Part shown: piece after piece, positions 3,763 to 57,265 of the stretch | Position numbering within the stretch: position 1 is the first letter of the stretch | How the letters are laid out: each line of letters opens with the position of its first letter | NCBI RefSeq assembly: GCF_947568905.1 | Contig: NC_079164.1 | Location: 25,606,001-25,670,000 of the forward strand | Length of the DNA stretch: 64,000 nucleotides | Origin: Ostrea edulis | Taxonomy: Eukaryota | Direction of reading: 5' to 3' | The notes under the pieces: model-generated | Seen by the model: the letters and a program-made list of their open reading frames with translations, nothing else | What the model was told of the DNA's origin: nothing | Databases searched by the model: none | Made by a program: the position numbers and the translations under genes

Positions 3763-5767
3763 ATGATGTGTCTAAGCAACAAATGGTATTTCTTTTATTC
3801 AGTTTTGTCTTTAATGCTCGAAAGTTTGATATTCAGTTAAGTATAATTTTAAAATGTCTTTAACAGGCCATACGACTGCTTGCCGAATTATAAGATAGGA
3901 GTCGAGAAATGTGAAAGTAAGTACCGAGAAATGTCACACGAAGAATTTTGAGAAAATTTAACATTAATAAATTCAACCAGTATTTTCATGAAAGACAAAC
4001 TCTAATGATTTCTATAGGAAACAATATTGTTAATGGTTCGTGCAACGAACAGGCCACGGGACTTTATCATATGATCCAATTCAGATCCTTTGATCCGCTC
4101 ATATCGCTACTCGATCTACATAATGTACGTGAGCGGATCAAACGATCTGATCTTAATCAGATTATCATATAATCCTTATGTTTTGTACAACAATGAAAAA
4201 AGTTTTAGATTCACGGTAATTATTTGAACAAATATCAGCTCTCTTCAGATGGAATGATATCATTAGCTTACATCAATTTTGTGCTGTGTAGTTTGTGATG
4301 CGGGTGAATACGGCTGTAATTGTTCCACGCCCTGTGGGGCCAACAGCTACGGTGTTAACTGCTATGAAACATGTCACTGTACACAGGACCAGATATGTGA
4401 TCCTCAGAATGGATGTCTAGTAGTCAATATCTCTACGAAAACGCCAGGTAAATTAAAATATTTTGTGTCGCGATGTTTTCCTTTTTCAGCAATTGTTCAA
4501 TAAACCTTGAAACACCAAGGACATGGATCTTTTTACTCCAGAAGAACTTTCAGTATCAGAATGGTATTTTACAGATAGCTGTACATAGACTAATTTTTGA
4601 AAATACCATCATTTGTGGAGGTGAGCACATGGGATACAATTCAATTCAATTTTCATATCATGAATCATAGATGCGAAGAGGACGAAGACTCGTATGGTTT
4701 GAAACTCTTCCGTATCTATGATACACTTCACATAATATGTACCTTTTCTATGATACCATTCTTGATTTCAATCGATATTACTTATATTTGCACAATCCAA
4801 GAGCAGTCAGTCTTTTTATAAACTACATGTATCACTCTGACCTTCAGAAACCCAGTCTGCAGAATATGACATGATGACGTCAGATCAGTTCAACGTTTTC
4901 TTCAGCAACATCACCACGTCTCTTCTGGTTTCCCTGGCATTTGTCGTGATTGTCAGCGTCATCTGCGGTTTCATTCTCATCAAGTAAATGAAGGAAACCA
5001 GAGCATTGAAAATGTTAACCTATAAACGATTAATAGATACTGCTAATTTTACATACCTACTTACTGTCTAAATATTACTGATATTAATTTCTAGTCGTAC
5101 ATTTGTATTATTTATAAAAACGGCTGTTTATTTCAGGTCAAGTAAAAGATATTACAAACGTGAATATCGTAAGTAATTTCTTCTTCTTCAAAAGATGAAT
5201 ATCTATATCATGATTCTAATTGCAAGTAAATTGAGGTTTCTCAGTTCAATGTTAACTGATGCAATGATTTCAATTTTGAAAAAAAAAAATTCAGAACGAA
5301 TGCTGAGTAACTTAATGGAGGGAAGGCCAGGGGCTGGAAATGAGTATCATGGTTACAGCTCTGCAGACTCATTGACCAACTTCAGACTCTTTCCTTCAGG
5401 CGGCGAAGAAAATACGTACGATCATACCGATAGAGGCGACTACCACATTCTGTCTCTCAGACATACGTCACAGAGGGCGTGTGTTTACGACGGACAATGT
5501 CCTCTGATGACGTCATTTCACGTCCAGACTCCACAAACAACTGCTGAAATATCACCATCGCCTGATATCGAATATCTAGGTATTAACATTGAACCAGAAT
5601 GTTTAATAAATCTCTTTAGAGAATCGGAAGATGACTTATTTAGCACTGTCAGTAATCAGGAAATCATATCCGAGATCCAGAGTGACAGTGAAAAGGGGAA
5701 TTATGAAAATTACAGCGGATGTGACGTGAACAGTGGGATCCTGAACACAGGAAGCGTGCTGTCTTAA
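3763..5767 (+). CDS. Gene A: single-pass EGF-like (MEGF10/SCARF-like) receptor, ectodomain class I + tail class X; 5' end unresolved
   Basis: Exons 3763-3785 (MMCLSNKW, uncertain), 3867-3916 (PYDCLPNYKIGVEKCE), 4292-4447 (CDAGEYGCNCSTPCGANSYGVNCYETCHCTQDQICDPQNGC), 4848-4983 (TM SLLVSLAFVVIVSVICGFILI), 5137-5168 (SSKRYYKREY), 5295-5767 (Tyr-rich tail, stop TAA). All introns GT-AG; phases 2,1,1,2,1 match paralogs; 870 nt = 289 aa plus stop. Confidence 0.8.
4081..4150. repeat. 21-bp inverted repeat hairpin related to the 483-582 palindrome
   Basis: TCAGATCCTTTGATCCGCTCA (4081-4101) versus TGAGCGGATCAAACGATCTGA (4130-4150), 1 mismatch. Shares ATCCGCTC and TTAATCAGATT with 483-582. Confidence 0.7.
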
Positions 5768-6228
5768 AATAGAGACGCTGTATAGGACGATACACAATAT
5801 CTGTTCAAAATAAGTTTGGAAAATAATTTTTGTCTCACATTTCAGTGGATTGCTTTCGGTGTTATTTTGAATATCAGAATGTTTATATGATAGTCTATTA
5901 AACCAATGAACATTACATATCCTCAATGTTATCAATATTGGCAATGATCGTTTTCTGATTCAAAATATATAAAAATCATATTGTTATTATTTGACTTCAT
6001 AATGTACGAGTATATAGTCGTGGTACTTATTCCCGTTCGTACTTCTGAAATTGAATTTTATACGTACAATGTCAACAACGTGTCCATTATCTACAAAATA
6101 TCAATTTAAAGTAAATGACTTGATTGTTGATTGGGATATATTATAAACAATGGAAGCATGGATTTCGTGCATGATAAGAAAAGTCAATAAAGTAAATTAC
6201 AGATACCCGATACCTATATCCATTTTTC

Positions 6229-6233
<5 letters not shown>

Positions 6234-6277
<44 letters not shown>

Positions 6278-6629
6278 CACTAAAGTTCCAACAACACCCG
6301 ATACCTCAAGAGTGTCGGATCCACAACATGGATACAAGGTCAAATACAAAAAATTATACAAAGCACTAAAATGACCAACGACACGAACAACGAGATTGGA
6401 GACGCTGTGTAGGACGATACACAATATCTGTTCAAAATAAGTTTGGAAAATAATTTTTGTCTCACATTTCAGTGGATTGCTTTCGGTGTTATTTTGAATA
6501 TCAGAATGTTTATATGATAGTCTATTAAACCAATGAACATTACATATCTTCAATGTTATCAATATTAGCAATGATCGTTTTCTGATTCAAAAAATTGTTG
6601 TTCGTGTCGTTGGTTATTTTAGTGCTTTG

Positions 6630-6683
<54 letters not shown>
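6234..6683. mobile_element. Insertion between two (TA)n runs: 34-bp inverted repeats enclosing a 194-bp copy of gene A 3' UTR
   Basis: (TA)n ~6234-6275 and ~6634-6683; inverted repeats 6358-6391 and 6597-6630 (1 mismatch); 6399-6592 duplicates 5772-5965. Confidence 0.75.
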
Positions 6684-6684
<1 letters not shown>

Positions 6685-13239: not shown

Positions 13240-16200
13240 ATGTATACATGTAATTTAATCATATGTGTCATTTTGACCGCGAATCCGGTATACAATATAC
13301 ATAATTCTACAGTAGGATGTTACATAAACGACACGTAAGTAACCATGATAATTATGACAACTGGAAATTATTCCTCTGTCAATTTCTAATGTATACTGTA
13401 CATATTTTATACTATATGCTGTATGTTGTATTGTACTTCTTTACTTTCATAAGATTGTAGGTGATACTGCGTTTTACATCACAATGTACATCTGTTATAT
13501 CTTACAGTTGTGTCCGGAAGGGGGGGGGGTACAATTGTAAGAAAGACGAAGATAACGAACAGTGATAAATCTAATAACTTCTATAAGCAATACAAAACAG
13601 AGAGTTAAGCGAAAAATAAGGAGAGAGAATTCAAGGAGCAAATCACGGTTTCCTCAAACTTTTGTTTGTCGTTTTGTGAAATACAGATGTACATGTATAC
13701 GGAACATTTTATTGGTTTTCATGGAATTTTGAATCATTGATTCAATTAAATCCATTATTGGCAATGAGATTAAAAGTATCTCTAGTACTTTTATTTTCGA
13801 CTTTATCAAAGCATGCCAGATTGGCGAATATTAAATACTAAGTGAATTACAAATTGCGCTTTTAGACTTAGATGTTATTCATGATATTTCTTTACAAAGA
13901 GAGAGGGACATAGAAATGACGAGAAAACCCCCAAATCGTAATATGTTTACTGTGAACACGGAAATATTCGCCCCCGTTTTAATTTCGTCCCTTTTGCCCT
14001 CGTTGTCAATAGGCGAATTTGAGAGTGGGAGAAACTGTTTTCTCTCACATCTCTCTTTTAAATCAACTATGTCTGGATGAATTTAAAACGGGACGAAACT
14101 GCCTGCGAGTGTAGAAAGGCGAAAATAACACGGGACGAAAATAACACTGTATACAGTATTTCAAACATATTTTATTATGTATAATTCCAATGTGATTTGT
14201 TACAATTGTTTTGATTGGACAAAAATAAAGCTGAACAATAGTTTACACATGAATAAATCTGAAAACGTGATGTATTCATACATGTCTGAAAACAAATATC
14301 GTACATGTAGTACGGGGAAACTATTCAAATTTTTGCAATTGTCAATAAAGCGAATGAATTGGAATTATAAGAATCAAACATTCTTTTTGAAGAATTTATC
14401 GATGTGTAACCTCGTTTTGTTTTACTCACACTTCGCACTTTTATTCAGTTTGTGAGTAAAATGTCCGGAGTTTACACATCGATAAATTCTTCATAAATGT
14501 TTACATAGACTTCTCCAGTACTAGATCATTACTTTATCAAATTATAAATGAAATTAGTTGCAAGTCTAGCAGAGATATTTTGCGAGGTCCGTCCACGACA
14601 AAAAACAAGGTCGTCATATTTTCCCATACAAAGTCTATAACCTTTTTATTATCAAAATGGCCAAATGAGCTCTAAAACTTCATTGTTATTTCGGATTTCA
14701 AACATTTCGGTTGAGCATCACTGAAGAGACATTATTTGTCGAAATGCGCATCTGGTGCATCAAAATTGGTACCGTACAAGTTTTACATTATATACTTTTT
14801 ATATATTTTTAACAATTTCTTTATTGGTTTAACTGAGTGAAAGATGAAAAACACGAAAAATTTGAAAATTAACGGCGTCGTAACGGCTTGTGTATTGATT
14901 GTGACGTAATGTTTGCCGGCCGAAATGTTTCTGGGCATATATCTTGGGATATATGCCCGGAAACTTTTAAAGGAAAAAGAAGAGATGAAATTGAAAGTAT
15001 ATAATAAAAAGATATATAAATATCAATAGTAAGTAGAACAAATGTAATGATAAAAAGATTAGTTATAATCACATCGTTTATATACACTACCTTTATATCT
15101 TAAGACAAATTTAGTTATTTTCATTCCAGGTTTATCCCATGTGAAACAAATTTGAAATTAATGAAATCAGGGAAATGTGAAGGTAAATATACTCTCTGTT
15201 ATACTTGAAACAGAAGTGGCTGTAGTTATTTCATGATTAACTTGAATATACATGATCAAATTTAGAATAAAATGCTCAGGGTGAGAATATAACCTTTGAG
15301 ATTCTGGGAGGAATTAATCACCCCTACATTGCCAGAAATATACATTCTTGATGTACACATTACGATGTGTAGATCGTTCTATTCAACAAGTTCCCAGGGT
15401 AATCCCCACCCCCTCATTCTATGATTGTTCAAATATCTTCAAAACAGATGAAATCATTACCCTTATGGCCTATTAGGATGGATAAGTCAAAATGCATTGA
15501 GTATTCTGCTGGGCAAGTGCCCTTGGGGTAATCCCAAACCCTATTTCATAATTGTTGATATACATCTAAAGCAATTGAGATCCTGACCCCTAAACCAAAT
15601 GCATGTATATTCCTGCTGCACATATGAAGATGCATTGAGTATTCTGATGGGTGGGCAAGTGCCTTAATCCCTGGACCCATCATGTTTTTATTGTTCAAAT
15701 ATCTTTAAAATGGTTGAGTATCCAACCCTTAAAGCAAATATATTCTTGTTGCACATGACACAATGCGCTGAGCACCATATTTTCGTTCGCCTCCACCCCT
15801 TTCGCTCCTCAAGGTAAAAATAAAAATTCCAAAACCCCACATCTAAAGGACACCGCCAACCATCTCCCAAAAGTTGATTTAGCCAATTCATAAAATGTAA
15901 GAGTAGTTCTTAAAACCAGGTTTTTATGTAGAAAAATGTCGTTTTTGAACCCCAATTGGCCCACGAGTGAAAATGAAAATGCACATCTATAGGACACCAC
16001 CAATTACCTTCCAAAAGATGATTTGGCATAAAATGTATGAGGAGTTCTGGGAACCAAGTTGGGTTTTACTTTTTAAAAAAGCATCATTTTTTACCCTATT
16101 TGCCCCAAGGTAAAATTCAAAATTCTGAAACCTTATTGCACATCTACAGGACACCACCTATCACATTGCAAAAGATTATTTGATTACTGCTTAAAATAAA

Positions 16201-19200
16201 AGAGGGGTTTAAGGAAGAAGAAAGTGTGACAAACGGACGGACTAGGGTAACAACAATATACCTAAACTTTCTTTAGAAATTGCGGGTATTATGAAAATAA
16301 AATTCTCCATCAGAAAACATACCAGATTTCCTTTGTCGAAAGATTTTATTTTAGATCTGATAAACGGTAGCAGTTTTAAAGAAAAATATAGATATATTCT
16401 GTTTGTAGATTGCGAGGCTGGTAGATATGGTTGTAACTGCTCTCTAGTATGTTCCAGCAATGCATTTGGTGTAGGCTGTTACTCCACATGTAACTGTTTT
16501 GCTGATGAGATTTGTGATCCCGCAACAGGATGTACTAGCAACACCAGTGTTTCTTCATATACAACAGGTAGATTTCTCTATAAACATTTATATAACAGTT
16601 ATGAAACAGGTACTATTTTCTAATTGTTGAACAACAGGTAGAATTCCCTATGAGTAATACAACATATTTCCCATTAACTTATACAACAGTTAGATTGATA
16701 TATGAACATATTATCCTATCAGGTACAATTAGTATGTTAATTTTTTTTTCTCTTTAAATACGCATGATTTGAAATAAACGTTTGTTTTGCGACATGTTTT
16801 TGGTGATCAAAACAACTAATTATTGTATTTCCCTACATATTTTGTGAATTATTGAAAAACATTTCGTAGTCCATAGATTAGAAATAGTTCAGCTTTTTTT
16901 CTATAAGAATTTATCTAAATAACGATTTTGTTGTGTTTTGCCGATTTCGTGGTTACATGCGCATTATAAAATCTAATATTTTGATGGAATAAGTTGCAGT
17001 ATATATCCATATATTTCCATATCTATTGCATCTCTCTTCCCATGAGATATGTTTTCAGATTCCTCCAACCTTCCAAGAAGTTCTCCTGTAAGGTCATTTA
17101 ATTTTCCAAAAAACAATCGTCTGAACAAATTTCCGTTGTCGCTGCTGGTGTCCTCGGCAACTGTAGTTTTCTTCAGCATACTCTGTGCTGCTATCCTGAT
17201 ACGGTATTACACAATACTCAAATCTATTTCATTTGAAATTGTTATTTCTACACATGCCTCAAATTTTATTTCTTTTTAAAACATTTTCAGATTAAAAAAA
17301 AGAGTATACCAACGTGAATACAGTAAGTAAATTTGATTTAGAGTCCTATTTCAAAATCCACACAATTTGTGTAGTATTAATTTAGGATTTAATATAGTTT
17401 CAAATCATCTTATTCATGAGGGTCAGAATTCTAGAAAAAATACCATCATACTACAAAAGGTAGAAAATGTGGGAAATCTTGAAAGTCCACATGGAAATAA
17501 TGTGAATGTGATGGAACTCTACGTAAACTAAACATAGTCATGGACATCGTCATGCTCACGGCGGGTGTGACCGGTTGACAGGGAATGCTTACTCCTCCTA
17601 GGCACCTGATCCCACCTCTGGTGTGTCCAGGGGTCCGTGTTTGCCCAACTCTCTGTTTTGTATTGCTTATAGGAGTTATGAGATTGATCACTGTACGTTA
17701 TCTTCGCCTGTAATGCCACCGGATGATAATTCGAAACACACCGCCCGTCCCTTAAACTTAGTCTAATTAACAAAGGAATATATGCTATCAACATGAACAA
17801 CATCGTTGGTTATAATACAGTTCAGACTTGTATTCCAAGTTCCGGTCAACACCCTGTATTACCCACAAGTGTACCTCTACTATTGCATCCATTTGTAAAT
17901 TTACAAACACACTTTACGCTTAGATATAGATGATCTTATTCAAAATTATAGGGGAAAACAGAGTGCCAAAAAAAGTGGAGTCAAATTCGTCTAACGATAA
18001 TATACCATAGGATTTGCGAAATGCTGACTTTAAACGAAACTGTTGAAATCCCTGCATCATCAACTTGTTTTCAGTAGCCTGCCTCGATTTAAAAACTGAC
18101 CACACACCGAACAAGCTCTTGCGTATCAAATCAGTTGAGAGATATTAACACCATATGTAGGTGATAATGGAATATTGCTACATAAATATGGGAAGTTGAC
18201 GATGGAGAAGTTGAAATCGTCCTGTTTGTCATAAAGTTGAGTTGTTAGTTTACCGTTATATATATTTCCAATAAAATATTCAAGTATGAAGCAGAAGTGG
18301 ACGAGCTCACAGGGATATATCGAATCGACATATAAATGAAAATTATCATTGTTGATAGATAATACATCGTCGATATATATAAATGTCAAATTCAAGGCCA
18401 CAGCAAGAGATTTTTTTCTTCTCACGTAAAAGTGTTTCGATAAATTCTGCTTCATAGGTATATAAAAACAAGTCAGCTAACAAAGGAGCACAATTCGTGC
18501 CCTTGTTGATTCCAACAGACTGTTGGAAGACCTGAACACCAAAGACCACGATGATAATTATTGTCAATTAGGAACTCCAGCATATTTTGTATTTCAACTT
18601 CAGAGTGCTTGTGTGGGGAATCAGAATGGTGTTTAACAAAGGAATTTTTTGGATGGCTGAATACTAGATTCGAATATTTCCGTTTTCCATTATTTTAAAG
18701 AAGCAACTGCCTATGATGTCAAAAAGTCTAGTCTTTAATTCATCGTGAGGAATGGTAGTGTAAAGTGTTGAAAAGTCATACCTTTTGATTTTCTTGTTTT
18801 GGGAAAAGTTTTGCGATTTCAAATTCACTAAAAATTCTCCAGAAGTTTTTAGAATCCACATTTGATTTACACCACTTCTGGTATATGTAGTCGCACAATA
18901 CTTTTGAGGTTTCTCCTTCACAGCTGTTAATGTTTTCGTGAGGAGCAAAGATAGGGGCTTTGTAGAACATTTACTGGATTCAGCAATGTATCTTTATTTG
19001 TAAGGGTTTTTATGAAATTTAGGAATCTAGTATAGGTACGGTAACTCATATTCATCCGACCCATTGACTAGGATATTAAATGTGTCTAACATTGAAGCAT
19101 GGTTTTGAAGAATTCATCTTTTGAAAAGGCAAATATCATTTTAATTGTGATTTCCCGCTCTTGCGTGGGGTTTTATCTAGTACAAATAAAAAGGAATACT

Positions 19201-19352
19201 TGTAAAAAAAAACACCCCAACAACCCAAAAAGCAATAATCAAAATGCAAAAACAACCCCTGGAAATATATGACAAGAAAACCAATGTCAAAGTATATAAC
19301 ATAAATCGAATTAATGTGTAATACATGTACATCAAATCTATGAAATGTCATT

Positions 19353-19395
<43 letters not shown>

Positions 19396-26763: not shown

Positions 26764-26864
26764 CGATTAAATACAGATTGCTATCAGGGAAACATAAGGC
26801 ATGTTTGATGTAATTAAAGCATGAGATGTCTCTTTTAACTTTTACCGTTAATTCCCAGCTCTTT

Positions 26865-36524: not shown

Positions 36525-37019
36525 ATGTATACATGTAATTTAATCGTATGTGTTATTTTGACCGCGATTCCGGTATATAATTCTACAGCAGGATGTAACA
36601 TAAACGGGTAAGTAACCATGCTAATTATGACAGCTGGAGATTCTTCTTCTATCAACTTCAAATGTATACTGCACATATTTAATTGTATAAATTCATACTG
36701 TGCTGTATGTTGCATTGCCTTTATTTACTTTCATAAGTTTGTAGGTGAGTTTGAGTTTTACATTACAATGTACATTTGTCATATGTTACATATATGCTTG
36801 GAGGTGTGGCAGTTCATACAATTGTAACGGATAGAAAATAAGAACCGAGAATTTAAGGAGTAATTTACGTCTTCTGCAAGTCTTTCAAGTGCCGATTTTC
36901 TGTCGTTTTGTAATATACAGATGTGCCAGGAATATTTTGTTAATTTTCAAGGAATTCTAAATCGGTTAATTTTATCGACATTATCAACACCTGGCATATT
37001 AGCGAATTGAATTGAATGG

Positions 37020-37068
<49 letters not shown>

Positions 37069-41897: not shown

Positions 41898-41948
<51 letters not shown>

Positions 41949-44029: not shown

Positions 44030-44080
<51 letters not shown>

Positions 44081-47000
44081 GTTAAGTCAATGAATATGGG
44101 CATACATAGACCGTAATTAAGTATATGGTCACCAAAGAGACAATGAAATTATATTTTCGTTTATACATTTCCTTTTATGTGTCTTTGTGTAATCAATTGT
44201 TTATTATTGATTGCAAATGCAATACCCGCATTTTCACACAGGTGTATATTTCTATCATTATTCCCTTATTTGTATATCCAAGTTTGTATATGATCATCAA
44301 TAAATTTTGAATTGTGCACGCAATATATCCAACCAGATGCTAGGTGTATATCATTAGATTCCCGATTTCTATAAACTGCAAAACCTCGACCAGACAAGCA
44401 TTCAATACAGGAAAACAAATATCGACTCTGACATCTCCCCTGATTGAAAACACCCTGTTTGGCCCTGGTGAAGTGTGTCGCAGTCTGTACAATGGAACGA
44501 CAACGTGTTGTAAAGTTCTAACGAGATACAAATAGGGTTTATCATTTTGTTTCGTGGATTCATCATAATAAAGAGAATCTAATATTTTCGGTAGGTGCAC
44601 ATCTCCGATACCTGTTGAGTAGACATCCGTATTTGATAAGTTTTACAGAATGGAACATTCTAATGTTTTACTGATGTAAAAGATGTGGTTGGTACAAAGA
44701 ACTTTTTAAGCTATTATTGTCTTATTTCAAAAGTACCCAAAAAGATTAAAAGACAAATTGCTGATTTTAAAAACAAAGTACATCATGAATTTTTGAGTCC
44801 AAATCAATGCATTGTACAGAAATGAACTCTAGTTCTAATGTTAAATTGTTATATCAAGTTTTGAAGGAAAAGGAGTTCATAGCCCCACAACTCAAAAGAG
44901 AGAAGTGGGAAACTTATCTCAGTGAAACTATTTCAGGAAAATGTTATACTTAATTTTACTGTATGAACGCATCATTAAGCACAAAGAAACAAAATTAATT
45001 GGTTTTCAATACCGTAGTATGTGTTATATAGCTACAAACTCTTTCCTTCACAAACTTAAAACTTGTAGACAATGACTTGTGTTCATTTTGCAAAAGCGAA
45101 AGAGAAACAGTCACTAATATTTTTTATGACTGTGCGTATGTATCTGCTTTCTGGAGAGATTTTGTGAAATGTTACAATGCACTTGAAAAAGATTATAAAA
45201 TCACAAAAAGAATTGTGTTGCTAGGCAATATTGATGGAAGCTGGTTGGAAAAATTTCTTCTTTTGTTAGCAATAGAGCACATCTATTACTCCAGATCACA
45301 GGGCTCAAAACCCAAATTGTCAGATGCAATTGATTTGTTTAAATACTATAGAAATTTATAAAACTATTGTCAAAATGTATTTCATAGCAAATCCAAAATG
45401 CTTGGTAAATGGGCATTGTATGATAATATAATGGACAAATAGTTTGTTGAAAATCACTATACATTTATATGAAAAATAAAACAATTACCTTTATCTTTAA
45501 ATTTCCATGTTTATGTGTGTATTTATATTTATGTGTGTGTATGTATATGTTATACATGTATATATTATATATACAATTCATTGTAATTGTTGATTTAGAA
45601 GGTGCACGGAGTAATTGCAAATGTGAATGAGCGAGTGAAGATTACAGTTTGTATGTATAAATGTTTTGAAAACACAAAAATAAAACATTAAAAAAACAAA
45701 GGAGCACAGTTCGTGCCCAGGGGATTTCCAAGAGACTGTAAGAAGACCTGATCACCAAAGACCACGAAGATTTTGTCAATGAGGAACTCCAGCATATTTT
45801 TTATTTCAACTTCAGAGTACTTGTGTATGGAATCAGAGCGGCGTTTACCAAAATATTTTTTGGGATGACTGATCACTAAATAGGAATATTTGCGTTTTCC
45901 ATTTTTGTTGATAAAGCAACTATCTATGATGTCAAAAAGTCTAGTCTTTAATTTATCGCGAGGAATGGTCGTGTAAAGAGTTGAAAAGTCGTACGTTTTG
46001 ATGTTGATTTGAGAAAGGTTTTGTGATTTCAAGTTTACTAAAAGTTCTTTGGAAGTTTTATTAGAATCCACATTTGATTTACACCACATCGGGCATATGT
46101 AGTTGCACAGTACGTTTGAGTAGAATAAATATTGATAACATGAACCCATTTCAATCCGTAGTAGTTTAAGTTAATCTTACTGAAAATCGTAGTCTGAACG
46201 CAATGCAGATTAGATATTGTGTGTGAAGTTTACTAATGTTATGCCAATCCCAGTTTGAACCACCCTAAGTAACACGATACGCGTAATCTCCAGTGATTTT
46301 CTTGATTGAAAAGAAATGTCAATTTAAACCAGACACAGTTGATCAGTCCCCATACAATTGTAGATGGATGGTCGTATAATCACTCATTACATCGAGTCAT
46401 ATGAAATGCAAAACATTTTGTATATGGCATTTTTAAATATTTCAATCCGACTCCTGTGTAACGACCATGGGTGTTTGTTTCTTTATGATAATTCAGACAA
46501 TATCATACATGTACCACATATCATCCGTCTACTGATTTGTTTATTTATCTAGAAGCTCAAGAGACGACAACAGTGCTGAGAAATAGTGCAGCGCCATTAG
46601 CGCCATTAAAGCCATTGAGGATGTTCAACATTGTTATTATTGCCTTAGCAGCCTCATTGGTAATAGTGGTTACGCTGAGCATTTCCTGCATAGTTATTGT
46701 ATTAAGGTAATGATAATTATCTATCATAATATCAGTTGTTGTGTCACAATATCCCTGTCTATTGTAGCTAAACTTTTAATTCTCTTTTTATGTCCCCCAC
46801 CTACTTGAAGATTCAGGGGCACATATTTTTGGTTTGTCTGTCTGTGTGTCTGCAAAACTTTAACACTAGTCCTAACTTTTGAATAGATGCTAATATAGCT
46901 TTTATATGTTACATGTGTAATGTATTCCTGGTGACATAACCTTCTTTGATTATCAAAAGATTTGACCTCGTGATCGTTTGACTTGTTTTTGAGTAATATA

Positions 47001-48945
47001 GACCAAAGCCATAACTTCTAAGTGTTTAGTAATATGTCTTTTATATTCCACATGTACATTCCTTTTGAAAAGACCTTTCTTTAAGTAACATTTTTTTAAA
47101 TACCTCATGACCTTGACCTATTACCTACTTTTGAAATGTTAACCTTGGTCAAAACCTTTGAACGGGTTGGACTAAGGCTTTGCTATTTCACATGTACGTG
47201 TCTTCTTTGTAATAATAGTTTTCATTTCTGAATTTGTAATTTTGACCTTGGGGTTTGACATACTTTTGAAAAACTTTAACCTTGGCCCTTATCAACTACG
47301 TCGCAATTCGGGTGCATCAGTGTTTTACAAGCACAGATTGTTTCATTGTGTGATTGTATGACTGAAAGTTAGGTTTAACAAAAGCCTTCAGAAATTTAAG
47401 ATAATTATCGATTCATATGGAGGACAAGTTGTAAAAGTGACAAACATCAAATGTCAATGTGTTTTTGAAAAGACTCTAGGGATTTGAAATTTTGGGAAAG
47501 TCACTCAACAGGAAAATAAGATTTAGCAACGCATAGATACATTGTACATGTATTTATTTTCACTATATTTTTTAGTGCTGTAATAACAACGCATAAATAC
47601 ATGTATTTATTTTTACTGTATTTGTCTGTAGACGAAACTCGAAAAAGGGGACAAAAACAGCTACGAGTAAGTGCCCTAATGTTTTTATTATCGTTGAAAT
47701 AACAGCGTGCCACTTCGCTTGATGGAGCGTGCAAATTTCAATCACTGATTGGTCATGTAGTTTCAGTAAAGTGAGTTTGGATGACCACGTTATGCCATTC
47801 TTTCAATGAAGCCGCACCTAAACATTTGCAGGGTGATCAAGCTGTCATGCTGTTACTGAAATAATTGCATTAATTATTGAAATAAAACTCACTGCAGTCA
47901 TTGTTACCATAAACTAATGGACAGTAAGATAAAAAAAAATCTAGTATGGAACACGTAATGTCAATTGCTGCGAAATGAAAAAAGCAGGCTCGCAAATTCA
48001 GCTCTAAAATTTTTAAAACTTTCCAAACTCATTGATGATGAATATCATCAATAGCATTAAAATCACCAACCTTTATCTCTTTATGACGTCACAATCCTAT
48101 TCTGTTGTATTATGACAAAATCATCTGCGACTATATTCTCTGTGTTTGAGATAGTGTAAATATGCTATATTATTCGCCAACTTTCGATTCAAATTTGCTG
48201 ATAAGATAAAGAGCAATCATTAATTATGTAATAATCAACAAAACATTTTTAAATCTGTGACTGAGTAGATATCATATAGATTGTTAAACATTCGCAATAT
48301 GTATCTATTCATAACAAAGTCTTGCAATTTCGCCCCGCTTCTAAGAAAGACTCTAATATTTCTATAAATATGTAGAGAAACAATGTGATAATTTATGAAA
48401 TTCCAAATTGATGGAATTGAAGTTATGCCATTCGCAAAATAAATCTTTAAAATGGATAAAGTTTTTGATTTTAAAAATACAACTTTGTAATACGGATTAA
48501 TACTGTATATTTGTAAAATTATCTTAACGATAGATATATATTATGAATAAAAGGTGTCATCAATTCTAACTATCGTTTAGAAACAAAGAACAGCGAAGAG
48601 ATGTCTGAGACCGCGGAACAAAATCCAGATTCCCATTCGTACCTTACCATCAGCGAAAGATCCTTTCGTCTGTATGCCGATGTTCACTATGACGAAGCGG
48701 AGGAAAGGAAGAGCTTAACATCAGTATCATTACACAGTAAGGGATACGATACCAGCGTCAGTGATAAAAGTGAAGGATCCGATGATTATCTAACACCGAC
48801 AGTAAAGACTGCCAAAAAAGACACAACCGGTAGTCAGTCATCTGTAACACCGACAGTAAAAACTGCCCAAAAAGATGCAACCGGTAGTCAGTCATCTGGC
48901 GATTATGACGATACCATCACAAAATGTTCAGAAACCTGTATCTGA
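36525..48945 (+). CDS. Gene D: chimeric receptor, class II (E/B-type) ectodomain spliced to C-type TM and tail Y (282 aa, open frame)
   Basis: Exons 36525-36607 (MYTCNLIVCVILTAIPVYNSTAGCNING), 37410-37462 (SNPCGENSRLLESGKCE), 37601-37759 (EGF-like), 46553-46706 (TM, in-frame 9-bp duplication), 47632-47666, 48581-48945. All GT-AG; 849 nt. No B-type TM exon and no C-type exons 1-3 were seen between 37760 and 46552. Confidence 0.75.
37024..37066. repeat. (GA)n microsatellite (further GA/CT runs at ~41901-41943, ~44033-44077, ~56529-56575, ~61082-61119, ~63205-63257)
   Basis: Pure dinucleotide runs at matching positions in the two units, with different lengths. Confidence 0.95.
37886..38570 (+). 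repeat. 27-bp minisatellite (~25 units) in gene D intron 3
   Basis: Consensus GCGTTATATAACRGGTAGATTTCCCAT; 9-aa periodicity (RYITGRFPM) in ORF 37889-38593. Confidence 0.95.
38857..39345 (-). mobile_element. Penelope-like 3' fragment in gene D intron 3
   Basis: Starts AAGGTGGGGATAACGAACAGT (3' end, reverse complement) where homology to gene B intron 3 stops. Confidence 0.85.
39408..40975 (+). mobile_element. Full-length Tc1 element (1568 bp) with 26-bp TIRs and TA target duplication
   Basis: Left TA|TACTACTCAAAATATGATAAGGATCA, right TGATCCTTATCAAATTTTGAGTAGTA|TA (1 mismatch). Confidence 0.95.
39668..40723 (+). CDS. Tc1 transposase, DD34E, uninterrupted 351-aa ORF
   Basis: N-terminal HTH region, VLFTDESRY, MDDNARPH and SPDLNPIE with 34 residues between D and E. 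The TGA stop of the 28-kb copy is CGA here, extending the ORF by 5 aa. Confidence 0.9.
   Translation: MPPQRVRRRLTTEQLGRCIGMLDAGYSQRDVANALNVSQSVVNMAWNRQQTFGTATHRHGGGRQRSTTQRQDHLVAFQARRHPFGTGTSLRNDPLNASGVNFSTQTMRNQLHNAGLNSRRAPVRVPLTVRHRRERLNWAEDHVTWTQNDWVQVLFTDESRYCLDFTDRRHRVWRRQRERFHDTNISEHDCYGGGSIMVWSGLSRDGKTDVHVLERGTMPGVRYRDEILDVYVRPYAGAVGPEFILMDDNARPHRTRVVEQYLQQEIIFRMDWTARSPDLNPIEYVWNMLQVALSRRRAQPTTLTELGNALVEEWNNLPIGNIRVLIDTMARRCQAVIDARGGHTRYRHFID
43774..43852 (-). mobile_element. Penelope-like 3' tip (copy at ~62947-63022)
   Basis: AAGGTGAAGACAACGATCAGTGATCAATCTCATAACTCC...TTGGGCAAAC. Confidence 0.75.
44639..46130. mobile_element. Duplicated L1/Tx1-like 3' fragment (+, 44639-45697) and Penelope-like fragment (-, 45698-46130)
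   Basis: Copies of 22470-23537 and 23538-23985; ORFs CSFCKSERETVTNIFYDC and YDFSTLYTTIPRDKLK..GTNCAP. Confidence 0.85.
46785..47343 (+). mobile_element. HINE-like element in gene D intron 4 (copy of 24619-25170)
   Basis: Same termini and subrepeats. Confidence 0.7.
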
Positions 48946-49064
48946 GCATGACGATTAAATACAGATTGCTATCATAGAAACATAAGGCATGTTTGATGTA
49001 ATTAAAGCATGAGATGTTTCTTTTAACTTTTGCCGTTAATTCCCAGCTCTTTCCCTGCCTACAT

Positions 49065-49345
49065 TTTACAGAATTTGCGAAATGCTGATTTTAAACGAGA
49101 CTGTTGAAACAATGCATTGTAACATCAAACTATTTGTCGTTAGTCTACCTCGATTTAAAAAACTGTTCATACGCATAACATGTTCATAAGCATCGAATCA
49201 GTTGAGAGACATAAACACCATATGTAGGTGATGATGGAATATTGTTATATAAAGATGGTAGGTTGACGATGGAGAAGCTGAAATCATCCCCTTTACCATA
49301 AAGTTGAGTTGTTAGTCTACCGTCAATATCCATGTTCAACAACCT
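49065..49345 (-). mobile_element. Penelope-like RT fragment (copy of 26865-27140)
   Basis: LTTQLYGKGDDFSFSIVNLPSLYNNIPSSPTYGVYVSQLIR. Confidence 0.8.
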
Positions 49346-50997
49346 AATTTTGATGCAATTCATCAAATCGGCCACTAAGATTTTAAGATATTCTAAACTA
49401 GTTCCATGAAACACGAAAAATGTAAGATGAAATATTTTAAACAAAATCAAGAAACAATTCGAGTACTCACTTTAAAAAACATTAACCACTACACGAGTAA
49501 CGTGTGTTCAGCAGAGGGTTGATATTTATCAGTGGACACGTACCCGGTTACACCAAGGATTTTGCAATACATATTTCACAAAAATGTTTCTTGTCTACTA
49601 AGCAAGAAATGAATTTATTCAATACATTTACGATGATTACGATGATTATTCAACATGGATTTAATTTAACATAATCCTTCAATTCCTTAAATCTATAGTC
49701 CCGAGACAATGGGCTTTTACCAATGGTTCAGTCAAGTGACCTAATGTATCTTACCAGCTGATGTCTCCAGCTCACTTTGACACTGGGGTACAGACTCTTT
49801 TTTTTTTTTTTTTTTTTTTTTTAGACATTATTGCCAAGTGTCAAAGCTACGATGGTTAATCAGCTAGCCAACATAAACCGTAAGGCTTATTCAGCCCTAA
49901 TGTAGCCTTATACTTACAAAGGATCGGCTTTTCTGCGTCTCTTTTGTGGACATTTCTGCTTCGTTGTGGAGATCAGACAAAATGATCTGCGGTCGACCAA
50001 TATATAAATAGCATTTCCCGAACTTATTTCACTGCAAGGGAAACATGTTATCAAACATGATTGGATGAAGTTCAAAAAGTGAAACATTATTTATTCTCAA
50101 ATCATATAACAGTATCATGTGTATGTGAAAATTCTATTAGTTTTACACAAGATATTTTATTATTAAAATGCAGTTAAGCCCTCTTGTTCTCATCAGGACG
50201 AAATGGGGACTTAAAAGCGACCAACATATTTTTTTCACGCCCCTCTAAATTGAAATCCACAATTCGCCCTTGCTCATTGGAAAATTTGCATTGAAAATGC
50301 TTAAATTCACCATCATGATGGTACGCAGATTGAGTAAATGAATATTATTAGATTTTGAGTTTCAATAGATTGCAGAACCAAACTTGCTTCACAAATGTGC
50401 TGAATGTGTCATAGAATGAAATGGCAAGACATACCCTGTATCTATATCATATGATGATGGCAATATTACTCGCTGGATTAGCTATACTGCGGATGTTTTC
50501 AACTCTGATTTGCACGTCGCGGATCTTAAGCAAAGCAATAACCGAATATACATGCATATAAATATTTGCGGCTGTAGCATATTGAAACCAACTTAAATTA
50601 TTCTAATCAATTCATTTATTTACTTACATTGTGATATCTGGAATGTTATAATGAGTTGTTTCTATAATTCATACACTGTCATTACGGGGAATACTTGTAC
50701 AAGATACGTATAAAATCGTTAATTCATAATATTTATTTAATAACGAATAAAAATGAAACGTATTAATTGAAATTATAAAGAGTTACTTGTATATTTATAC
50801 ATATCTCTAAAAATCTTTAATCAGAGCTTTTATAGTATATCAGTGTGTACAATTTTACCAAAACAACAGAGGATCATAAGATAATACGAAACTGGAAGAA
50901 ATTGCTAATATCTGCTATATGTAAAACTTTTACATTTTACATTTACGTTATTTGCATTTAGACTAGTCAGATTCCCAACATTATCTACGTTGCAGTA

Positions 50998-51520
50998 GCA
51001 TGTCAAGAACGGCCTGACAATTGGTTTGAAACACGTCCGACAACATTCGACCTAACGACACGTTGTATTTGTAGATTTACATCATGGTAACGATCATAGA
51101 ATATTCTAAATGCTGACTTTAAACCAAACCTTGGAAACCCTTGTAACATCATCTTACTTGTCAGTAGCCTGAATCGATTGAAAAAAACAGATGAAACCCT
51201 AATCATTCATGCGTATCGAATCAATCGAGAGATATGAACACGATTTGCAAGTGGCAATGGAATATTGCTACATAAATATAGGAAGTTAGCGATGTTAAAG
51301 CTGAAGTAACCTCACTTGTCATAAAGTTGAGTTGTTAGTTTGCCGTTAACATCCATGTTCAATAACATCTCTAAGTACAATTCTGAAATGGGAGACTCTG
51401 TAGTGCCTTTTATTTCGCATTCACTGAGAGATATCGAATTAGTAATAGATAAACGTCATCGTTATACTGGTTGCAGATCTATCTGTAGATTTGAAGGCCA
51501 CAGCAAGAATTCTTTCTTCT
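50998..51520 (-). mobile_element. Penelope-like RT 3' fragment
   Basis: LLTSKMMLQGFPRFGLKSAFRIFYDRY; mostly absent at the matching position in unit 1 (~31435). Confidence 0.75.
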
Positions 51521-54129
51521 CGTATGCAAGGTTTATGATATAATAATCATATAGTTGGTCACACCTCTCGTAATCAAACATTTGTGGATCAGATTAGACA
51601 CAGTGGCATATGGAATATATAGCCAGTGTAACAGTTCATAAGTATGTCCAGTATTTAGACCATTATGACAGTGAATGACTGAATGTGCCGTTATGTAAGC
51701 ATTAATTGTTTTAAAATCAGAAATAGATGACAATAAATGATTTGATAGAGCAGCAACTTACATGTACGATTTTCATCCACCACTTCAGAACTAGGATATC
51801 CGCTATGTACCTAAACCATACACTAGGTCATTGTCTACAATATTCCAGGACTTCTGAATTGATTTTATCATAAATTTACAGTCCGGATTTGCCTCCCGCG
51901 CATTTGATGAAGTTTTCAGTTGACGTGGTAGAAGATCTGGTTGAAACGAAATACAAATTGATCAACTTGCTGAAACTTCTTCTGAAAATGCATTTATCTT
52001 GTGTACATCATCTAATCAAAACTAGCGATATTGTGTTAACAACATGCACACATTTAAGTACATGGTAGGTGTCTTGAAAGATATGCAATATTTAGACCAT
52101 TGAAAGAAAATATTATAGCGAACGACGTTTGACAAGTCCTGTTCGTGTTTTCGACCCGAGATCAAATATCAATTATCTTTCAATACAGTTACAATCAATT
52201 GAGTTTATTGTAGATCACAATATCAAGTTAATGCAGTAAGGGAATATATTATAAACAATGGAAGCACGGGTTTCGTGTAAGATAAGATAATACAAGTTAC
52301 AGATACCGATACGTCCATTTTTCTAACTGACAACAAATGTATAACCTCGACTCATGGTAGCATACGAGAGCAATAATTTCCAGAGGAGCGATGGAGTTCT
52401 GGTGATGTCTGTCGATAAGTGTCTGATAGGCTTTGATTTCAAATTGAATTTAAAGACTCCCTGATTGCACACTGGAAAGCAGTGCTTTGCCGTTGTGGAG
52501 GATCCAATACACTGACTTAGGATCTAGTAAATCGTCCCTGTGTGTAAGTATTGTACATATTGTGGTTACCATATGATAATGCTCAAACTAATTCAGCAAC
52601 CCAAGTACTGTACTCAGTACCTGAAGGATGTCATACACTGACCAATAATCTAGTAGATTGTCCCTATGTAAGTACTTACAGTGGTTACTATATACTGTAT
52701 TCAGACTAAGTCAGCAACCAAAACATTGTACTCAGCACCTGTAGGATAGAGAAGAATGAAAACATGATTTTTTATTAATATTCATAAAACTTCGTCTTGA
52801 ATTTAACTGCAGAATTGGCAGTCTGTAGCTAAACGGTCAAATATTTTGGAATGGGTGAACTAGATATTAAATTGCCACCAAATCGATGCGTATGTATTAG
52901 CTGCAATAATGTAGCCCTTTCCGATTTTGGTTGTTTGTTTGTTTGTTTTTGTTTGTTTTGTTTTGTTGTTGTTGTTTTTTGGAATGGAGGCTAGAACTTA
53001 GGATCTTCGTAATGGTGCAGATGCTGGAGTGATCATAAAGTGATTCATCCCCGCAACATTTTCGATCATTCTAAACATTTTCTGACTTTCTTTACGTAAA
53101 TAAAATGACATTCTATATTTCTTAGTCCATATATAAATTTACAACCTGCACATTACAATTTGTGAGGTTCTATTCTACCTTTTTAACAATTCAGACATAT
53201 TCCAATTTCTCGATTAATTTATATTATGCGCCATGTTTGAGCTGAACTTCCGGTTGTCAAGTTACATGTAATTGCATATTCCGATATAAGATCATATAAG
53301 ATAGTTTTACATCATGGACGATTACGGAGGAGAAAGCTATTTTGTCGGCATTGAAAGGGTTCAGATTTGAAATCAAGTTAAAAACGAACAGCAGATTGTA
53401 TTTTTTTTTTCTGCCACCGTATGGTTTTCTTTATTTTGTCGGAATGGCTCAAGTAACTACATTTTCGAGCTGATTGTCAATGTTTAGGTTTTTCAGTAGA
53501 TCCACCTACGAGATCTCTTGATAATAGACGAAGAAGTTTTTAAAAACACCTTTATTAGACGTGGCCAAGCACTGAGTTGGTACTCATTTTAGTGTAAACA
53601 TTGGAGACAAGTATTCGGAGCTTATTATCGGTCATTCATAAAAATATTTTGCACCATTACGATCATTCTATGACATTGTAGCCCCCTCCCGAAAATGTCA
53701 GAATAAAAAAATAGGAGATGGCTACATTATTGCAGCTAGATAGATATGTGTTAAAATGACACCAAAATATGATTTCTAACCCAGCGTTTACATCATTTTT
53801 GTATTATCATTAAACCAATTATAAAATATCTTAAAATCAATAAGAAATTTTACGTAACGTTTTCTTATTTAACAGTATATTATATATATTATATATAAAT
53901 CAGGAAATTGTTGTGTAAGAAGTATAGCAATAGTGCAAATATCAGCATAATAATTTCGTAAAAAGCAAAAACCCATGGTGTCACCTTAATGACTATGACG
54001 CAGGGCGGCCTAGTGGATCCTCCCTACCAATACAAACAATCTAACCCTTAAAAAAATAACAACTAAATAAATAATTACCAGAAGAGTGACGAGAGTTGTG
54101 TTGATGCCTGTTCATGTGTATCTGATAGG

Positions 54130-54575
54130 CAAATTTTATGGTCGTTATGGTCGTTGTAACGATCTGATTTACCAGTACAGCTTGTCATTGGGTAAAATGC
54201 TGTGTGGCCAATTGAGGTCGTTCTTTGCATACTGATTACGAACAGTGATCAATCTCATAATTTCCATAAAGAATACGCAATTAAGAGTACGACAAAGCAC
54301 GAACACCTGGACACATCCCAGAGGTGGGATAAGGCGTCTAGTAGAAGTAAGCATTCCCTGTTGACCGGTCACACCCGCCATGAGCTCTCTATCTTGATCA
54401 GGTAAACTGAACTGAATAAATTAGGAAGGTGAAGATAACGAATAGTTATCAACCTCATAACTCCTATAAGCAATACAAAATAGAGAGTTGGGCTAGCACG
54501 GACCCCTGGATATACCAGAGATGGGTGCCTAGGAGGAGTAAACATCCCCTGTTGATCGCCCACTTCCGCTGTGAG
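54130..54575 (-). mobile_element. Two Penelope-like 3' end fragments (copy of 34640-35135)
   Basis: Family 3' UTR, reverse complement. Confidence 0.75.
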
Positions 54576-55936
54576 CACTATGTTTTCATCGGATAAACGG
54601 AGTATTTTTTCATTGATGGAAGTACATTATGTGTACCACGAACCCCCCCCCCCCCCCCCCGAAAACTGTATCATTGCGGATAGCGCATGTAGTTAAGTTT
54701 CCTGGAGGGTTGTCACAGCTTCCAAAGGTAGATATAAGAGAGTGTTGTAAAAGGTAATGCAAGTTTTGAAGGTGAATTGCTAAGACATTGCTTTTGATGG
54801 TCATTGCAGTGCCTGTTTTAAATTCGTACGGAAACTTCGTTCCCATGTCCACTCATGAACGTAATATGCCGGAGTTCGAAACCGTCGTCGTTAGAGGTTT
54901 GAATATTGCAGTCGCTCTGAGGCAGTGTTCGATGTATTTTGAGAACCAGAATTTCTAGAAATGTCAGAACCGCTACGGTTCAAATGACAGACATTACCGT
55001 GAACCACACATTCTCTTGTTGTGGAGACACCAGTGCAGCTTTTAAACAGTGATTCGTGTCTGTGACATGACGAAGTTGTCGCAGGGTGTAAACTGGACAA
55101 TTGTCATCCCCGGCTGAGTACATGTGACTATCAGAATTGCAGAAGCAGACGTGTGCTATTTCTTTTTCTATTTTCAAATAGTCATTTTATTTTATTTTGC
55201 ATAATTATTTGCTTACTTATTATTTATATTCGATATTTGTTTGTTTCTGTTGAATAAATTTATTTAGAGCGATAGAATTGTTAAGTTTTTCTGTATTCAA
55301 CTGTATGTAATAAGACACTTATAAGAACCTTTTAGTATCCAAGATATACTCTTCAAAAATTTAAAACAAAAGACAATCTCTTTAAAACGTAGACATTTTC
55401 ACCATATAGATAAAGGAACAGCAAGTTGCATGTCATTGATAGATGAGATTAGATTAAATCTATTATGAGTAAACTCAGGACATTTGAAGAAAAATTGACA
55501 AGCATTTTCAGTATGGTGACAACAAATGGAATTATCTCCTAAGAAGTGATCTGTATGATCTGCATTTAGATTGCTTGCATTGTTTTTATGTTGACAATAC
55601 AAAATGTTTCCTTTGCGTTTACCAGAATCAAAAAGTTTACTAGATTGTAAGCAATATAATTTTTAAAGCAGTTTTAAATGATGAAAGTGATATACATCTA
55701 TCTTCGTATTGTAATGGATGTGTGCAGGCTGATATATAAACTTCCCGTTAAAATACTCACATCATTATTAAGTTTGGTTTTATTTCTGAATGTTGTTGAT
55801 GCAGGAAATTCCGGAAAATTGCAATTAAATTGCATAATGCTAAGAGTACAATATCTATGATGAAACCAAATTGAATTTGAATATAAACATGCACATTTGG
55901 ATGTAAAACCTTTCGAGATCTTGCTATAGCTTACAT

Positions 55937-55964
55937 GCAAGGTGAAGATAACGAACAGTGAACA
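55937..55964 (-). mobile_element. 28-bp 5'-truncated Penelope-like insertion with 6-bp TSD (TTACAT)
   Basis: TTACAT[GCAAGGTGAAGATAACGAACAGTGAACA]TTACAT; the matching site upstream of gene D (~36490) has a single TTACAT. Confidence 0.85.
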
Positions 55965-55999
55965 TTACATATAATGTTTGACATATAGAAACAATAGTT

Positions 56000-56523
56000 A
56001 TGTATACATGTAATTTAATCGTATGTGTTATTTTGACCGCGATTCCGGTATATAATTCTACAGCAGGATGTAACATAAACGGGTAAGTAACCATGCTATT
56101 TATGACAGCTGGAGATTATTCTTCTATCAACTTCAAATGTATACTGCACATATTTAATTGTATCAATTCATACTGTGCTGTATGTTGCATGGCCTTTATT
56201 TACTTTCATAAGTTTGTAGGTGAGTTTGAGTTTTACATTACAATGTACATTTGTCATATGTTACATATATGCTTGGGAGGTGTGGCAGTTCATACAATTG
56301 TAACGGATAGAAAATAAGAAGCGAGAATTTAAGGAGTAATTTACGTCTTCTGCAAGTCTTTCAAGTGCCGATTTTCTGTGGTTTTGTAATATACAGATGT
56401 GCCAGGAATATTTTGTTGGTTTTCAAGGAATTCTAAATCGGTTAATTTTATCGACATTATCAACACCTGGCATATTAGCGAATTGAATTGAATGGTAAAT
56501 GAAATTCAATTTGCGCTTACGGC

Positions 56524-56579
<56 letters not shown>

Positions 56580-57265
56580 AAGACAACTAGAAAAACCACA
56601 AAAACTCAAAAGTTCCATGTTCATTTTGACCATACATGTATTTTATTGTGTAGAAGTAGGCAGAGCATACATAGACCTTCTCCTGAGGTAGACGATGATA
56701 AAATTTTAACATTATCAATCAAATCAGTTGCAAGTCTAGCAGAAATATCAAGAATAGCTAAAAGTACATATAACGTTAACTCGATATCTATAACAAGCAC
56801 AAGAAAATATAAGTATCTATGACTTACATGTAATGATAAAAAGGGTTAGATATAACCGCGTTTACATAAATTGTATCTTTATACATTACGGCAAATGTAG
56901 CTATTTTCATTCCAGGTCTAACCCATGTGGAGAAAATTCCAGATTGTTGGAATCTGGAAAATGTGAAGGTAAATGCAATCCTAAATTTTAAAAACATGAC
57001 TCCATCAGAGAAGCGTACTAGATTGCCGCGCAGTTAAAAGGTTTTATATCAAATCTAATAAGGTACCTCTTTTGAGGAAAGGTATAGATATATTTCTTCT
57101 TTCCAGCTTGCGAGGCTGGTAGATATGGTTGTAACTGCTCTCTACTCTGTGCTAACAATACATTTGGTGTAGGCTGTTACTCCACATGTAACTGTTCTGC
57201 TGATGAGATTTGTGATCCCGCAACAGGATGCACTAGCAACACCAATGTTTCCTCATATACTACAG
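56000..57265 (+). CDS. Gene E exons 1-3 (class II ectodomain); TM and tail exons presumably beyond the window
   Basis: Exons 56000-56082 and 56916-56968 are identical to gene D; 57107-57265 has 5 nt differences from D. GT-AG sites intact. Confidence 0.82.

What the first reader, a model, noticed from the sequence alone, without database searches (positions are those of the whole stretch)
3763..57265. Receptor cluster shows all four combinations of two ectodomain classes and two tail classes
Seen: ectodomain class I (50-bp exon 2, C-x4-W|P-x2-C, YG[VL]NCY) occurs in A and C. Class II (53-bp exon 2, SGKCE, FGVGCYST) occurs in B, D and E. Tail X (32-bp exon 5 ending REY; EENTYDH..RG.Y.ILSLR and IEPECLINLF) occurs in A and B. 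Tail Y (35-bp exon 5; YLTI/YADV) occurs in C and D. So A=I+X, B=II+X, C=I+Y, D=II+Y. Inference: phase-1 intron 3 is a recurrent swap point between recognition and signalling modules, giving germline combinatorial receptor diversity. A and C ectodomains are only moderately similar, so class I may be ancestral rather than shuffled.
Basis: partly seen in the sequence, partly recalled or inferred. Interest (0 to 1): 0.82.

Follow-up and report, generated by a model that had tools for sequence, protein, structure and literature searches.

The report
Oyster mini-EGF receptors with swapped tails
A flat-oyster gene cluster encodes small one-EGF membrane receptors whose outside and inside halves occur in all four pairings, but only one pairing (gene D) is a provable recent swap, made by a 22-kb tandem duplication; the other three are old gene lineages.

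Summary
Five six-exon genes on the + strand (A-E; E finishes beyond the window) have exactly the stated exon sizes, motifs and phase-1 intron 3. My models of C, D and E equal Ostrea edulis RefSeq proteins.

- D (II+Y) is a real chimera. A 22.2-kb tandem duplication (about 95% identity) has one breakpoint in intron 3 of C and the other in intron 3 of E, joined with 2-3 nt of microhomology.
- "Class I" is not a clade. A is no closer to C than to B in exon 3 (55% against 53%; B-C 58%). The 50-bp exon 2 and C-x4-W|P motif also occur in a neighbouring class III gene and in Saccostrea, Magallana and Crassostrea, so they are ancestral. An A+C/F clade is not supported (p-AU 0.38 and 0.049).
- The order A, B, C matches Saccostrea echinata, so I+X, ?+X and I+Y are old lineages.
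- With D and the Crassostrea X/Y hybrids removed, ectodomain and tail trees are not significantly incongruent.

Module swapping does recur in the wider family. The Y cassette joins a lectin-like ectodomain on chromosome 9 at a phase-1 intron. Crassostrea genes combine an X-type membrane segment with a Y exon 6.

No RNA or read data could be obtained. Other windows of this genome were also noted as minimal-EGF receptor arrays.

The parts
3763..5767 (+). Gene A: ancestral-type ectodomain (50-bp exon 2) plus tail X. The 5' end is uncertain: exon 1 is either 3763-3785 without a signal peptide, or 3783-3835 with one.
   Evidence: Groups with S. echinata g1 at 89/91.
13240..20110 (+). Gene B: derived class II ectodomain (53-bp exon 2) plus tail X.
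20945..26763 (+). Gene C: ancestral-type ectodomain plus tail Y (Y-type TM exon, 35-bp exon 5, YLTI-x7-YADV exon 6).
   Evidence: Contained in XP_056013184.1.
22469..44638 (+). Copy 1 of the 22.2-kb tandem duplication unit. It runs from C intron 3, through C exons 4-6 and the spacer, to D exons 1-3 and part of intron 3.
44638..63820 (+). Copy 2 of the duplication unit, 94-97% identical to copy 1. It holds the copied Y cassette used by D (46553-48945) and E exons 1-3. The junction is at 44638-44640 with 2-3 nt of microhomology.
36525..48945 (+). Gene D: a chimera of class II exons 1-3 and a copy of C's exons 4-6, in frame across an 8.8-kb phase-1 intron 3.
   Evidence: Identical to XP_056017210.1. 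The same structure is seen in D' (XP_056017742.1).
56000..57265 (+). Gene E, exons 1-3 (class II). Its tail X exons lie 7.9-13 kb further on, outside the window.
   Evidence: Identical to XP_056014920.1.

Best explanation
The window holds the start of a large tandem cluster on Ostrea edulis chromosome 1. The genes encode minimal type I membrane receptors: a signal peptide, a short Cys-containing segment, one SCARF1/MEGF10-like EGF unit, a stalk, a TM segment and a Tyr-motif tail.

Three of the four module pairings are old, vertically inherited gene lineages:
- A has the ancestral ectodomain and tail X.
- B and E have a fast-diverged Ostrea 'class II' ectodomain and tail X.
- C and F have the ancestral ectodomain and tail Y.

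The fourth pairing, D (II+Y), was made recently by one microhomology-joined tandem duplication of 22.2 kb. Its breakpoints fell in the large phase-1 intron 3 of C and of the E ancestor. This placed a copy of C's exons 4-6 behind a copy of E's exons 1-3. D and E therefore carry near-identical ectodomains on unrelated tails, giving a paired-receptor-like couple.

Shown: the gene models, the duplication, the junction and reading-frame compatibility. Inferred: that D is expressed, and that the X and Y tails signal differently.

Across the family, the TM-plus-tail cassette (or exon 6 alone) has been re-used several times at phase-1 introns. Module shuffling is therefore real but occasional. The window's 2x2 table does not demonstrate it.
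For: Gene models and RefSeq identity.

Duplication architecture and junction.
- D against E exons 1-3: 100%, 100% and 96.9% DNA identity.
- D against C exons 4-6: 89% (a 9-nt indel), 100% and 95.9%.

Older duplication, about 90% identical, of the (B, C) pair and the (E, F) pair.

Ancestral status of the class I characters:
- Class III has C-x4-W|P..C and a 50-bp exon 2.
- All three S. echinata genes have a 50-bp exon 2.
- The motif is present in Magallana and Crassostrea proteins with either tail.

Trees and AU tests.

Synteny of A-like, X-tailed and Y-tailed genes in S. echinata.

Other swaps:
- Chromosome 9 lectin-like ectodomain plus Y cassette, with a phase-1 junction and about 70% identical introns 4-5.
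- X-type TM with Y exon 6 in M. gigas, C. angulata and C. virginica.
Against: - No RNA evidence was obtained.
- The basis of the RefSeq models is unknown to me.
- The ectodomain alignments are short (48-67 columns), so failure to reject congruence is weak evidence.
- In Saccostrea the X- and Y-tailed neighbours have about 89% identical exon 3 while their introns cannot be aligned. This could mean gene conversion or an older swap that the trees cannot resolve.
- A has no clear signal peptide, and neither A nor B was found among NCBI O. edulis proteins, so they may be pseudogenes.
Confidence: 0.8

Rival explanations
1. One reading: intron 3 is a recurrent recombination hotspot. A, B, C and D each arose by re-assorting two ectodomain classes with two tail classes within this cluster.
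For: - All four combinations exist.
- The Y cassette has 10 copies on chromosome 1, several of them behind different ectodomains.
- Saccostrea neighbours with X and Y tails have near-identical ectodomains.
Against: - Class I is defined by ancestral characters.
- There is no A+C support.
- The A-B-C order is conserved in Saccostrea.
- Congruence cannot be rejected once D is removed.
- The Y cassettes behind class III genes are orphans lying downstream of complete genes.
Confidence: 0.12
2. Gene conversion rather than cassette swapping: tails are stable, and ectodomain exons 1-3 are periodically homogenised between neighbours, with conversion tracts ending in intron 3.
For: - S. echinata g2 and g3 share 89% of exon 3 while their introns cannot be aligned.
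- S. cucullata X- and Y-tailed proteins have identical exon 3 peptides.
- O. edulis B against D: exon 3 is 95% identical, but exons 1-2 only 76-81%.
Against: - D's origin is a contiguous 22-kb duplication that includes introns and spacer, not a short conversion tract.
- In Ostrea, the B and C ectodomains are only 58% identical.
Confidence: 0.25
3. Assembly artefact: the tandem copies are mis-joined haplotypes, so D is not a real gene.
For: - A 200-kb higher-order repeat is 97.6-99.2% identical, which is within oyster allelic divergence.
- No read-level check could be made.
Against: - The 22-kb copies differ by about 5% with many indels and sit inside one contiguous sequence.
- The D-type arrangement (class II ectodomain followed by a Y cassette about 11 kb downstream) is present independently in the +200-kb copy as D'.
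Confidence: 0.05

Closest known systems
MEGF10 / MEGF11 / Draper / CED-1 and SCARF1 (multiple-EGF engulfment and scavenger receptors)
   Same: - The EGF unit has the CxxGxYGxxC...C.C...CDP..GC pattern.
- The best solved-structure match is SCARF1 (8hn0_A, E 2.7e-4).
- NCBI names relatives MEGF10, MEGF11 or draper.
- They are type I membrane proteins with tyrosine motifs in the tail. Draper has an ITAM (from memory).
   Different: - There is only one EGF-like unit, against about 15-17 in MEGF10.
- No EMI domain is present, and no Pfam EGF or Laminin_EGF hit appears even at E 0.1-1.
- The proteins are only 240-300 aa long.
- The tails have no detectable similarity to known families.
Vertebrate paired activating/inhibitory receptor clusters (KIR, LILR, Ly49, SIRP, CD300; fish NITR and LITR). 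Knowledge from memory.
   Same: - Tandem clusters.
- Near-identical ectodomains on different signalling tails (D against E).
- Hybrid genes made by unequal recombination or duplication in introns.
- Phase-1 domain boundaries.
   Different: - The ectodomain is EGF-type rather than Ig or C-type lectin.
- Tail Y carries its own ITAM-like motif (YLTI-x7-YADV), rather than a charged TM residue that recruits an adaptor.
- No functional data exist.
Classical phase-1 exon shuffling of extracellular modules (Patthy's rule; from memory)
   Same: - The modules are bounded by phase-1 introns.
- The swap happened by intronic DNA rearrangement.
- The reading frame is preserved.
   Different: - The shuffled unit here is the TM-plus-cytoplasmic cassette (exons 4-6), not an extracellular domain.
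- The event is recent enough that both parental breakpoints can still be read.

Membership tests
MEGF10/Draper/SCARF-type EGF receptors | EGF-like (laminin-type) repeat with the conserved Cys/Gly pattern | tested here: met
   The motif was read directly. phmmer matched SCARF1 8hn0_A at E 2.7e-4.
MEGF10/Draper/SCARF-type EGF receptors | Many tandem EGF repeats and an N-terminal EMI domain | tested here: not met
   There is a single EGF unit in exon 3. No Pfam EMI, EGF or Laminin_EGF hit was found.
Paired-receptor-type cluster | Near-identical ectodomains joined to unrelated cytoplasmic tails in neighbouring genes | tested here: met
   D and E ectodomains are 100% identical in exons 1-2 and 96% identical (protein) in exon 3. 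Their tails are Y and X, which show no significant similarity (E 0.66).
Paired-receptor-type cluster | Opposite signalling (canonical ITAM against ITIM), shown functionally | not testable with these tools
   Only motifs can be read. Tail Y has YLTI-x7-YADV, which is ITAM-like with V at the last position. Tail X has YDH..YxILSLR and EPECLINLF, and A alone has IEYLGI.
Exon shuffling at symmetric phase-1 introns | The same intron phase on both sides of the swapped cassette, and a DNA-level breakpoint within introns | tested here: met
   Intron 3 is phase 1 in A-F and in the chromosome 9 genes. The breakpoints are at 22469 and about 63820, inside intron 3 of C and E.
   Only D is a demonstrable recombinant. 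There is no A+C clade, and the trees are congruent without D.

The most novel reading that the evidence does not exclude
Oysters may run an EGF-based counterpart of vertebrate paired immune receptors. In this reading, a portable ITAM-like signalling cassette (tail Y, exons 4-6) is repeatedly captured at phase-1 introns by different recognition modules: EGF classes I and II, a lectin-like ectodomain on chromosome 9, and X-type TM genes in Crassostrea. Structural haplotypes would add to the diversity (D and E against D' and E', and truncated against intact E tails), giving a germline-combinatorial, polymorphic innate receptor repertoire.
Probability: 0.3. Interest if true: 0.7.

Novelty: new member of a known kind. 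Interest (0 to 1): 0.45.

Why it matters
The window gives an unusually clean, recent example of a new receptor gene born by tandem duplication with both breakpoints in same-phase introns. Both parents, the junction and the in-frame product can all still be read.

It also shows that the many bivalve genes annotated as 'MEGF10-like' include minimal receptors built from interchangeable recognition, membrane and signalling modules. That makes a paired-receptor hypothesis for mollusc innate immunity directly testable.

Finally, a 2x2 table of shared characters can mislead when one of the classes is simply the ancestral state.

Tried and rejected
- Pfam and NCBIfam scans of A, C, D, E' and relatives gave no family.
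- A word search with A's tail found only the window's own ORFs.
- Two searches for RNA runs found no run on record as RNA.
That used the only call, so nothing was laid.
The far part of the cluster is therefore mapped only from exon hits.
- I first read the class III ectodomain plus Y tail (L031) as a further chimera. I rejected this because that class III gene has its own TM exon and tail ORF, and the Y cassette lies downstream as an orphan.
- The very strong AU rejection of a Y-tail ectodomain clade (p 5e-53) was driven by D and the X/Y hybrids. It vanished when they were left out.
- In one search my regular expression cut the wrong TM segment for O. edulis C and D and for S. cucullata P0019. 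Only the X-type TM grouping (98/100) is used from that tree.
- Literature searches found no paper describing this receptor family or its shuffling. MEGF10-like genes appear only in oyster expression lists.
Full report
**What the window is.** The window is G000:C1:25606001-25670000. The chromosome length, 112,480,954 bp, is the same as that of the contig carrying several NCBI Ostrea edulis proteins that match my gene models exactly. Sequencing runs holding the DNA are labelled with one organism or as 'oyster metagenome'. The sequence is AT-rich (about 35% G+C) and full of interspersed repeats.

**Checking the observation.** I built six-exon models by reading splice sites and checking frames. 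A, B, C, D and E (plus F, just outside the window) all have GT/AG introns and open frames. Exon 2 is 50 bp in A, C and F, and 53 bp in B, D and E. Exon 5 is 32 bp in A, B and E, and 35 bp in C, D and F. Intron 3 is phase 1 in all of them. D equals XP_056017210.1 ('MEGF11'), E equals XP_056014920.1, and C lies within XP_056013184.1.

Three caveats apply:
- E's tail exons lie 7.9-13 kb beyond the window. They are tail X, nearly identical to B's, but carry a frameshift deletion and stop before IEPECLINLF.
- A's C-x4-W exon 1 (3763-3785) gives no signal peptide. An overlapping alternative exon 1 (3783-3835) gives one.
- Neither A nor B turned up among NCBI O. edulis proteins.

**How D arose.** Self-comparison shows a tandem duplication in which 22470-44640 is repeated at 44639-63826 with 94-97% identity. 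A three-way alignment and a position-by-position comparison put the switch at 44638-44640. Upstream of it, the sequence matches E's intron 3 (parent position about 63820). Downstream, it matches C's intron 3 (parent position 22469). Only 2-3 nt of microhomology are shared, so this is a non-homologous tandem duplication rather than unequal crossing-over between repeats. The result is D:
- Exons 1-3 are a copy of E's (100%, 100% and 96.9% DNA identity).
- Exons 4-6 are a copy of C's (89% with a 9-nt indel, 100% and 95.9%).
- The two halves are joined in frame because both introns are phase 1.

The same arrangement recurs 200.4 kb downstream as D' (XP_056017742.1), which argues against a local mis-assembly. 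An older duplication, about 90% identical, relates the (B tail, C) pair to the (E tail, F) pair.

**Is 'class I' a real group?** It is not.
- In exon 3, A is 53% identical to B and 55% to C. B and C share 58%, and C shares 62% with D and E.
- An ML tree of exon 3 with paralogs from other clusters as outgroups is unresolved. AU tests reject none of A+C/F (p 0.38), A+II (0.38) or II+C/F (0.31).
- The neighbouring, more distant class III gene has an exon 1 ending C-HDQN-W, a 50-bp exon 2 starting P-G-C, and a Pro at the exon 2/3 junction.
- All three S. echinata genes have 50-bp exon 2.
- The GGCHVNxW|PxSCxANF..CE|PCE pattern is general in Saccostrea, Magallana and Crassostrea proteins, whatever their tail.

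The class I characters are therefore ancestral, and class II is a derived Ostrea form on a long branch (100/99). With these species added, A groups with S. echinata g1 (89/91), and an A+C/F clade is borderline rejected (p-AU 0.049).

**Age of the pairings.** In S. echinata (locus L040) the order is:
- g1: A-like ectodomain, X-type TM, 32-bp exon 5, X exon 6.
- g2: X-tailed.
- g3: Y-type TM, 35-bp exon 5, Y exon 6.

This matches A, B, C. The pairings I+X, ?+X and I+Y thus predate the split of these genera. When D and the X/Y hybrids are left out, a clade of Y-tailed ectodomains (p 0.15) and one of X-tailed non-A ectodomains (p 0.24) cannot be rejected. The alignments have only 48-67 columns, so this is weak evidence for congruence.

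**Shuffling elsewhere in the family.**
- Tail X exon 6 has only four copies in the genome: A, B, E and E'.
- Tail Y has ten copies on chromosome 1 and two on chromosome 9.
- The chromosome 9 genes (XP_056005796.1 and relatives) have a large non-EGF ectodomain with a weak C-type lectin match (E 0.004, below Pfam's cut-off). It is joined to the Y cassette across a phase-1 intron. Introns 4 and 5 are about 70% identical to C's, so the cassette moved as genomic DNA.
- In M. gigas, C. angulata and C. virginica, genes annotated in several independent releases have X-lineage exons 1-5 but a Y-type exon 6. Their ectodomains and TM segments nest within the X clade (92/97 and 98/100), so the junction is at phase-1 intron 5. 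One of these models spans 24 kb and overlaps another gene, so that model alone is doubtful.
- Some Y cassettes in O. edulis are orphans lying downstream of complete class III genes.
- The class III tail shares only a short YxH..YNxLSL motif with X (E 0.009) and nothing with Y. X and Y show no significant similarity to each other.

**Saccostrea ectodomains.** The X- and Y-tailed neighbours have about 89% identical exon 3 while their introns cannot be aligned. In S. cucullata the exon 3 peptides are identical. This may reflect exon-limited gene conversion, and I could not resolve it.

**What the proteins are.** They are signal-anchored type I proteins of 240-300 aa with one EGF-like unit. The best solved relative is SCARF1 (E 2.7e-4). 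Pfam recognises nothing. More than 680 similar exons lie in clusters on at least eight chromosomes, so the counts are lower bounds. Earlier first-stage notes of this scan flagged other such arrays in this genome. I found no paper describing the family.

**What could not be done.** No RNA runs were found. Expression of D, and the status of A and B, therefore remain untested. A 200-kb higher-order repeat (97.6-99.2% identical) may be a young duplication or an uncollapsed haplotype.

**Verdict.** The strong reading, a recurrent swap point shown by four combinations, is not supported for this window. One recent chimera, D, is supported and explained mechanistically. Occasional cassette re-use at phase-1 introns is supported for the family as a whole.

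Noticed in passing
G000:C1 about 25.83-26.03 Mb (loci L017-L025, L012): A higher-order repeat lies about 200.4 kb downstream and repeats the D, E, F and class III part of the cluster. The copies are 97.6-99.2% identical over 3.3-kb samples. It may be a very young duplication or an uncollapsed haplotype. E (frameshifted tail) and E' (intact tail, XP_056016510.1) could then be alleles.
   Followed up: partly
L031:10055-10000+ and L032 (C1:25730055-25739732): An orphan Y-tail cassette (exons 4-6 plus flank, 91-96% identical to C's) lies downstream of a complete class III gene. That gene has its own TM exon (L031:4745-4868) and tail ORF (L031:5084-5752).
   Followed up: partly
L030/L026 and L033/L027 (chromosome 9, about 61.35 and 61.40 Mb): Two genes (LOC125657772 and LOC130050249) have a C-type-lectin-like ectodomain joined to the Y cassette at a phase-1 intron. 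A B-like TM exon lies on the opposite strand just downstream.
   Followed up: partly
window 37886-38570 and 57380-57930: A 27-bp minisatellite sits directly after exon 3 of D and of E. It reads as an open frame of ITGRFPM-like repeats. Another first-stage note also flagged it.
   Followed up: no
window 22780-23049: A fragment of a reverse-transcriptase-type ORF (LINE 3' end) lies inside C's intron 3, just after the duplication breakpoint. It is carried along in the D and class-III-adjacent cassette copies but is absent from F.
   Followed up: no
window 16409-16567 against 37601-37759: B and D share 95% DNA identity in exon 3 but only 76-81% in exons 1-2. This suggests strong constraint on the EGF exon or gene conversion limited to it.
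   Followed up: no
   Followed up: no
window 63000-64000: A dispersed repeat has more than 40 copies at 85-95% identity across all chromosomes.
   Followed up: no
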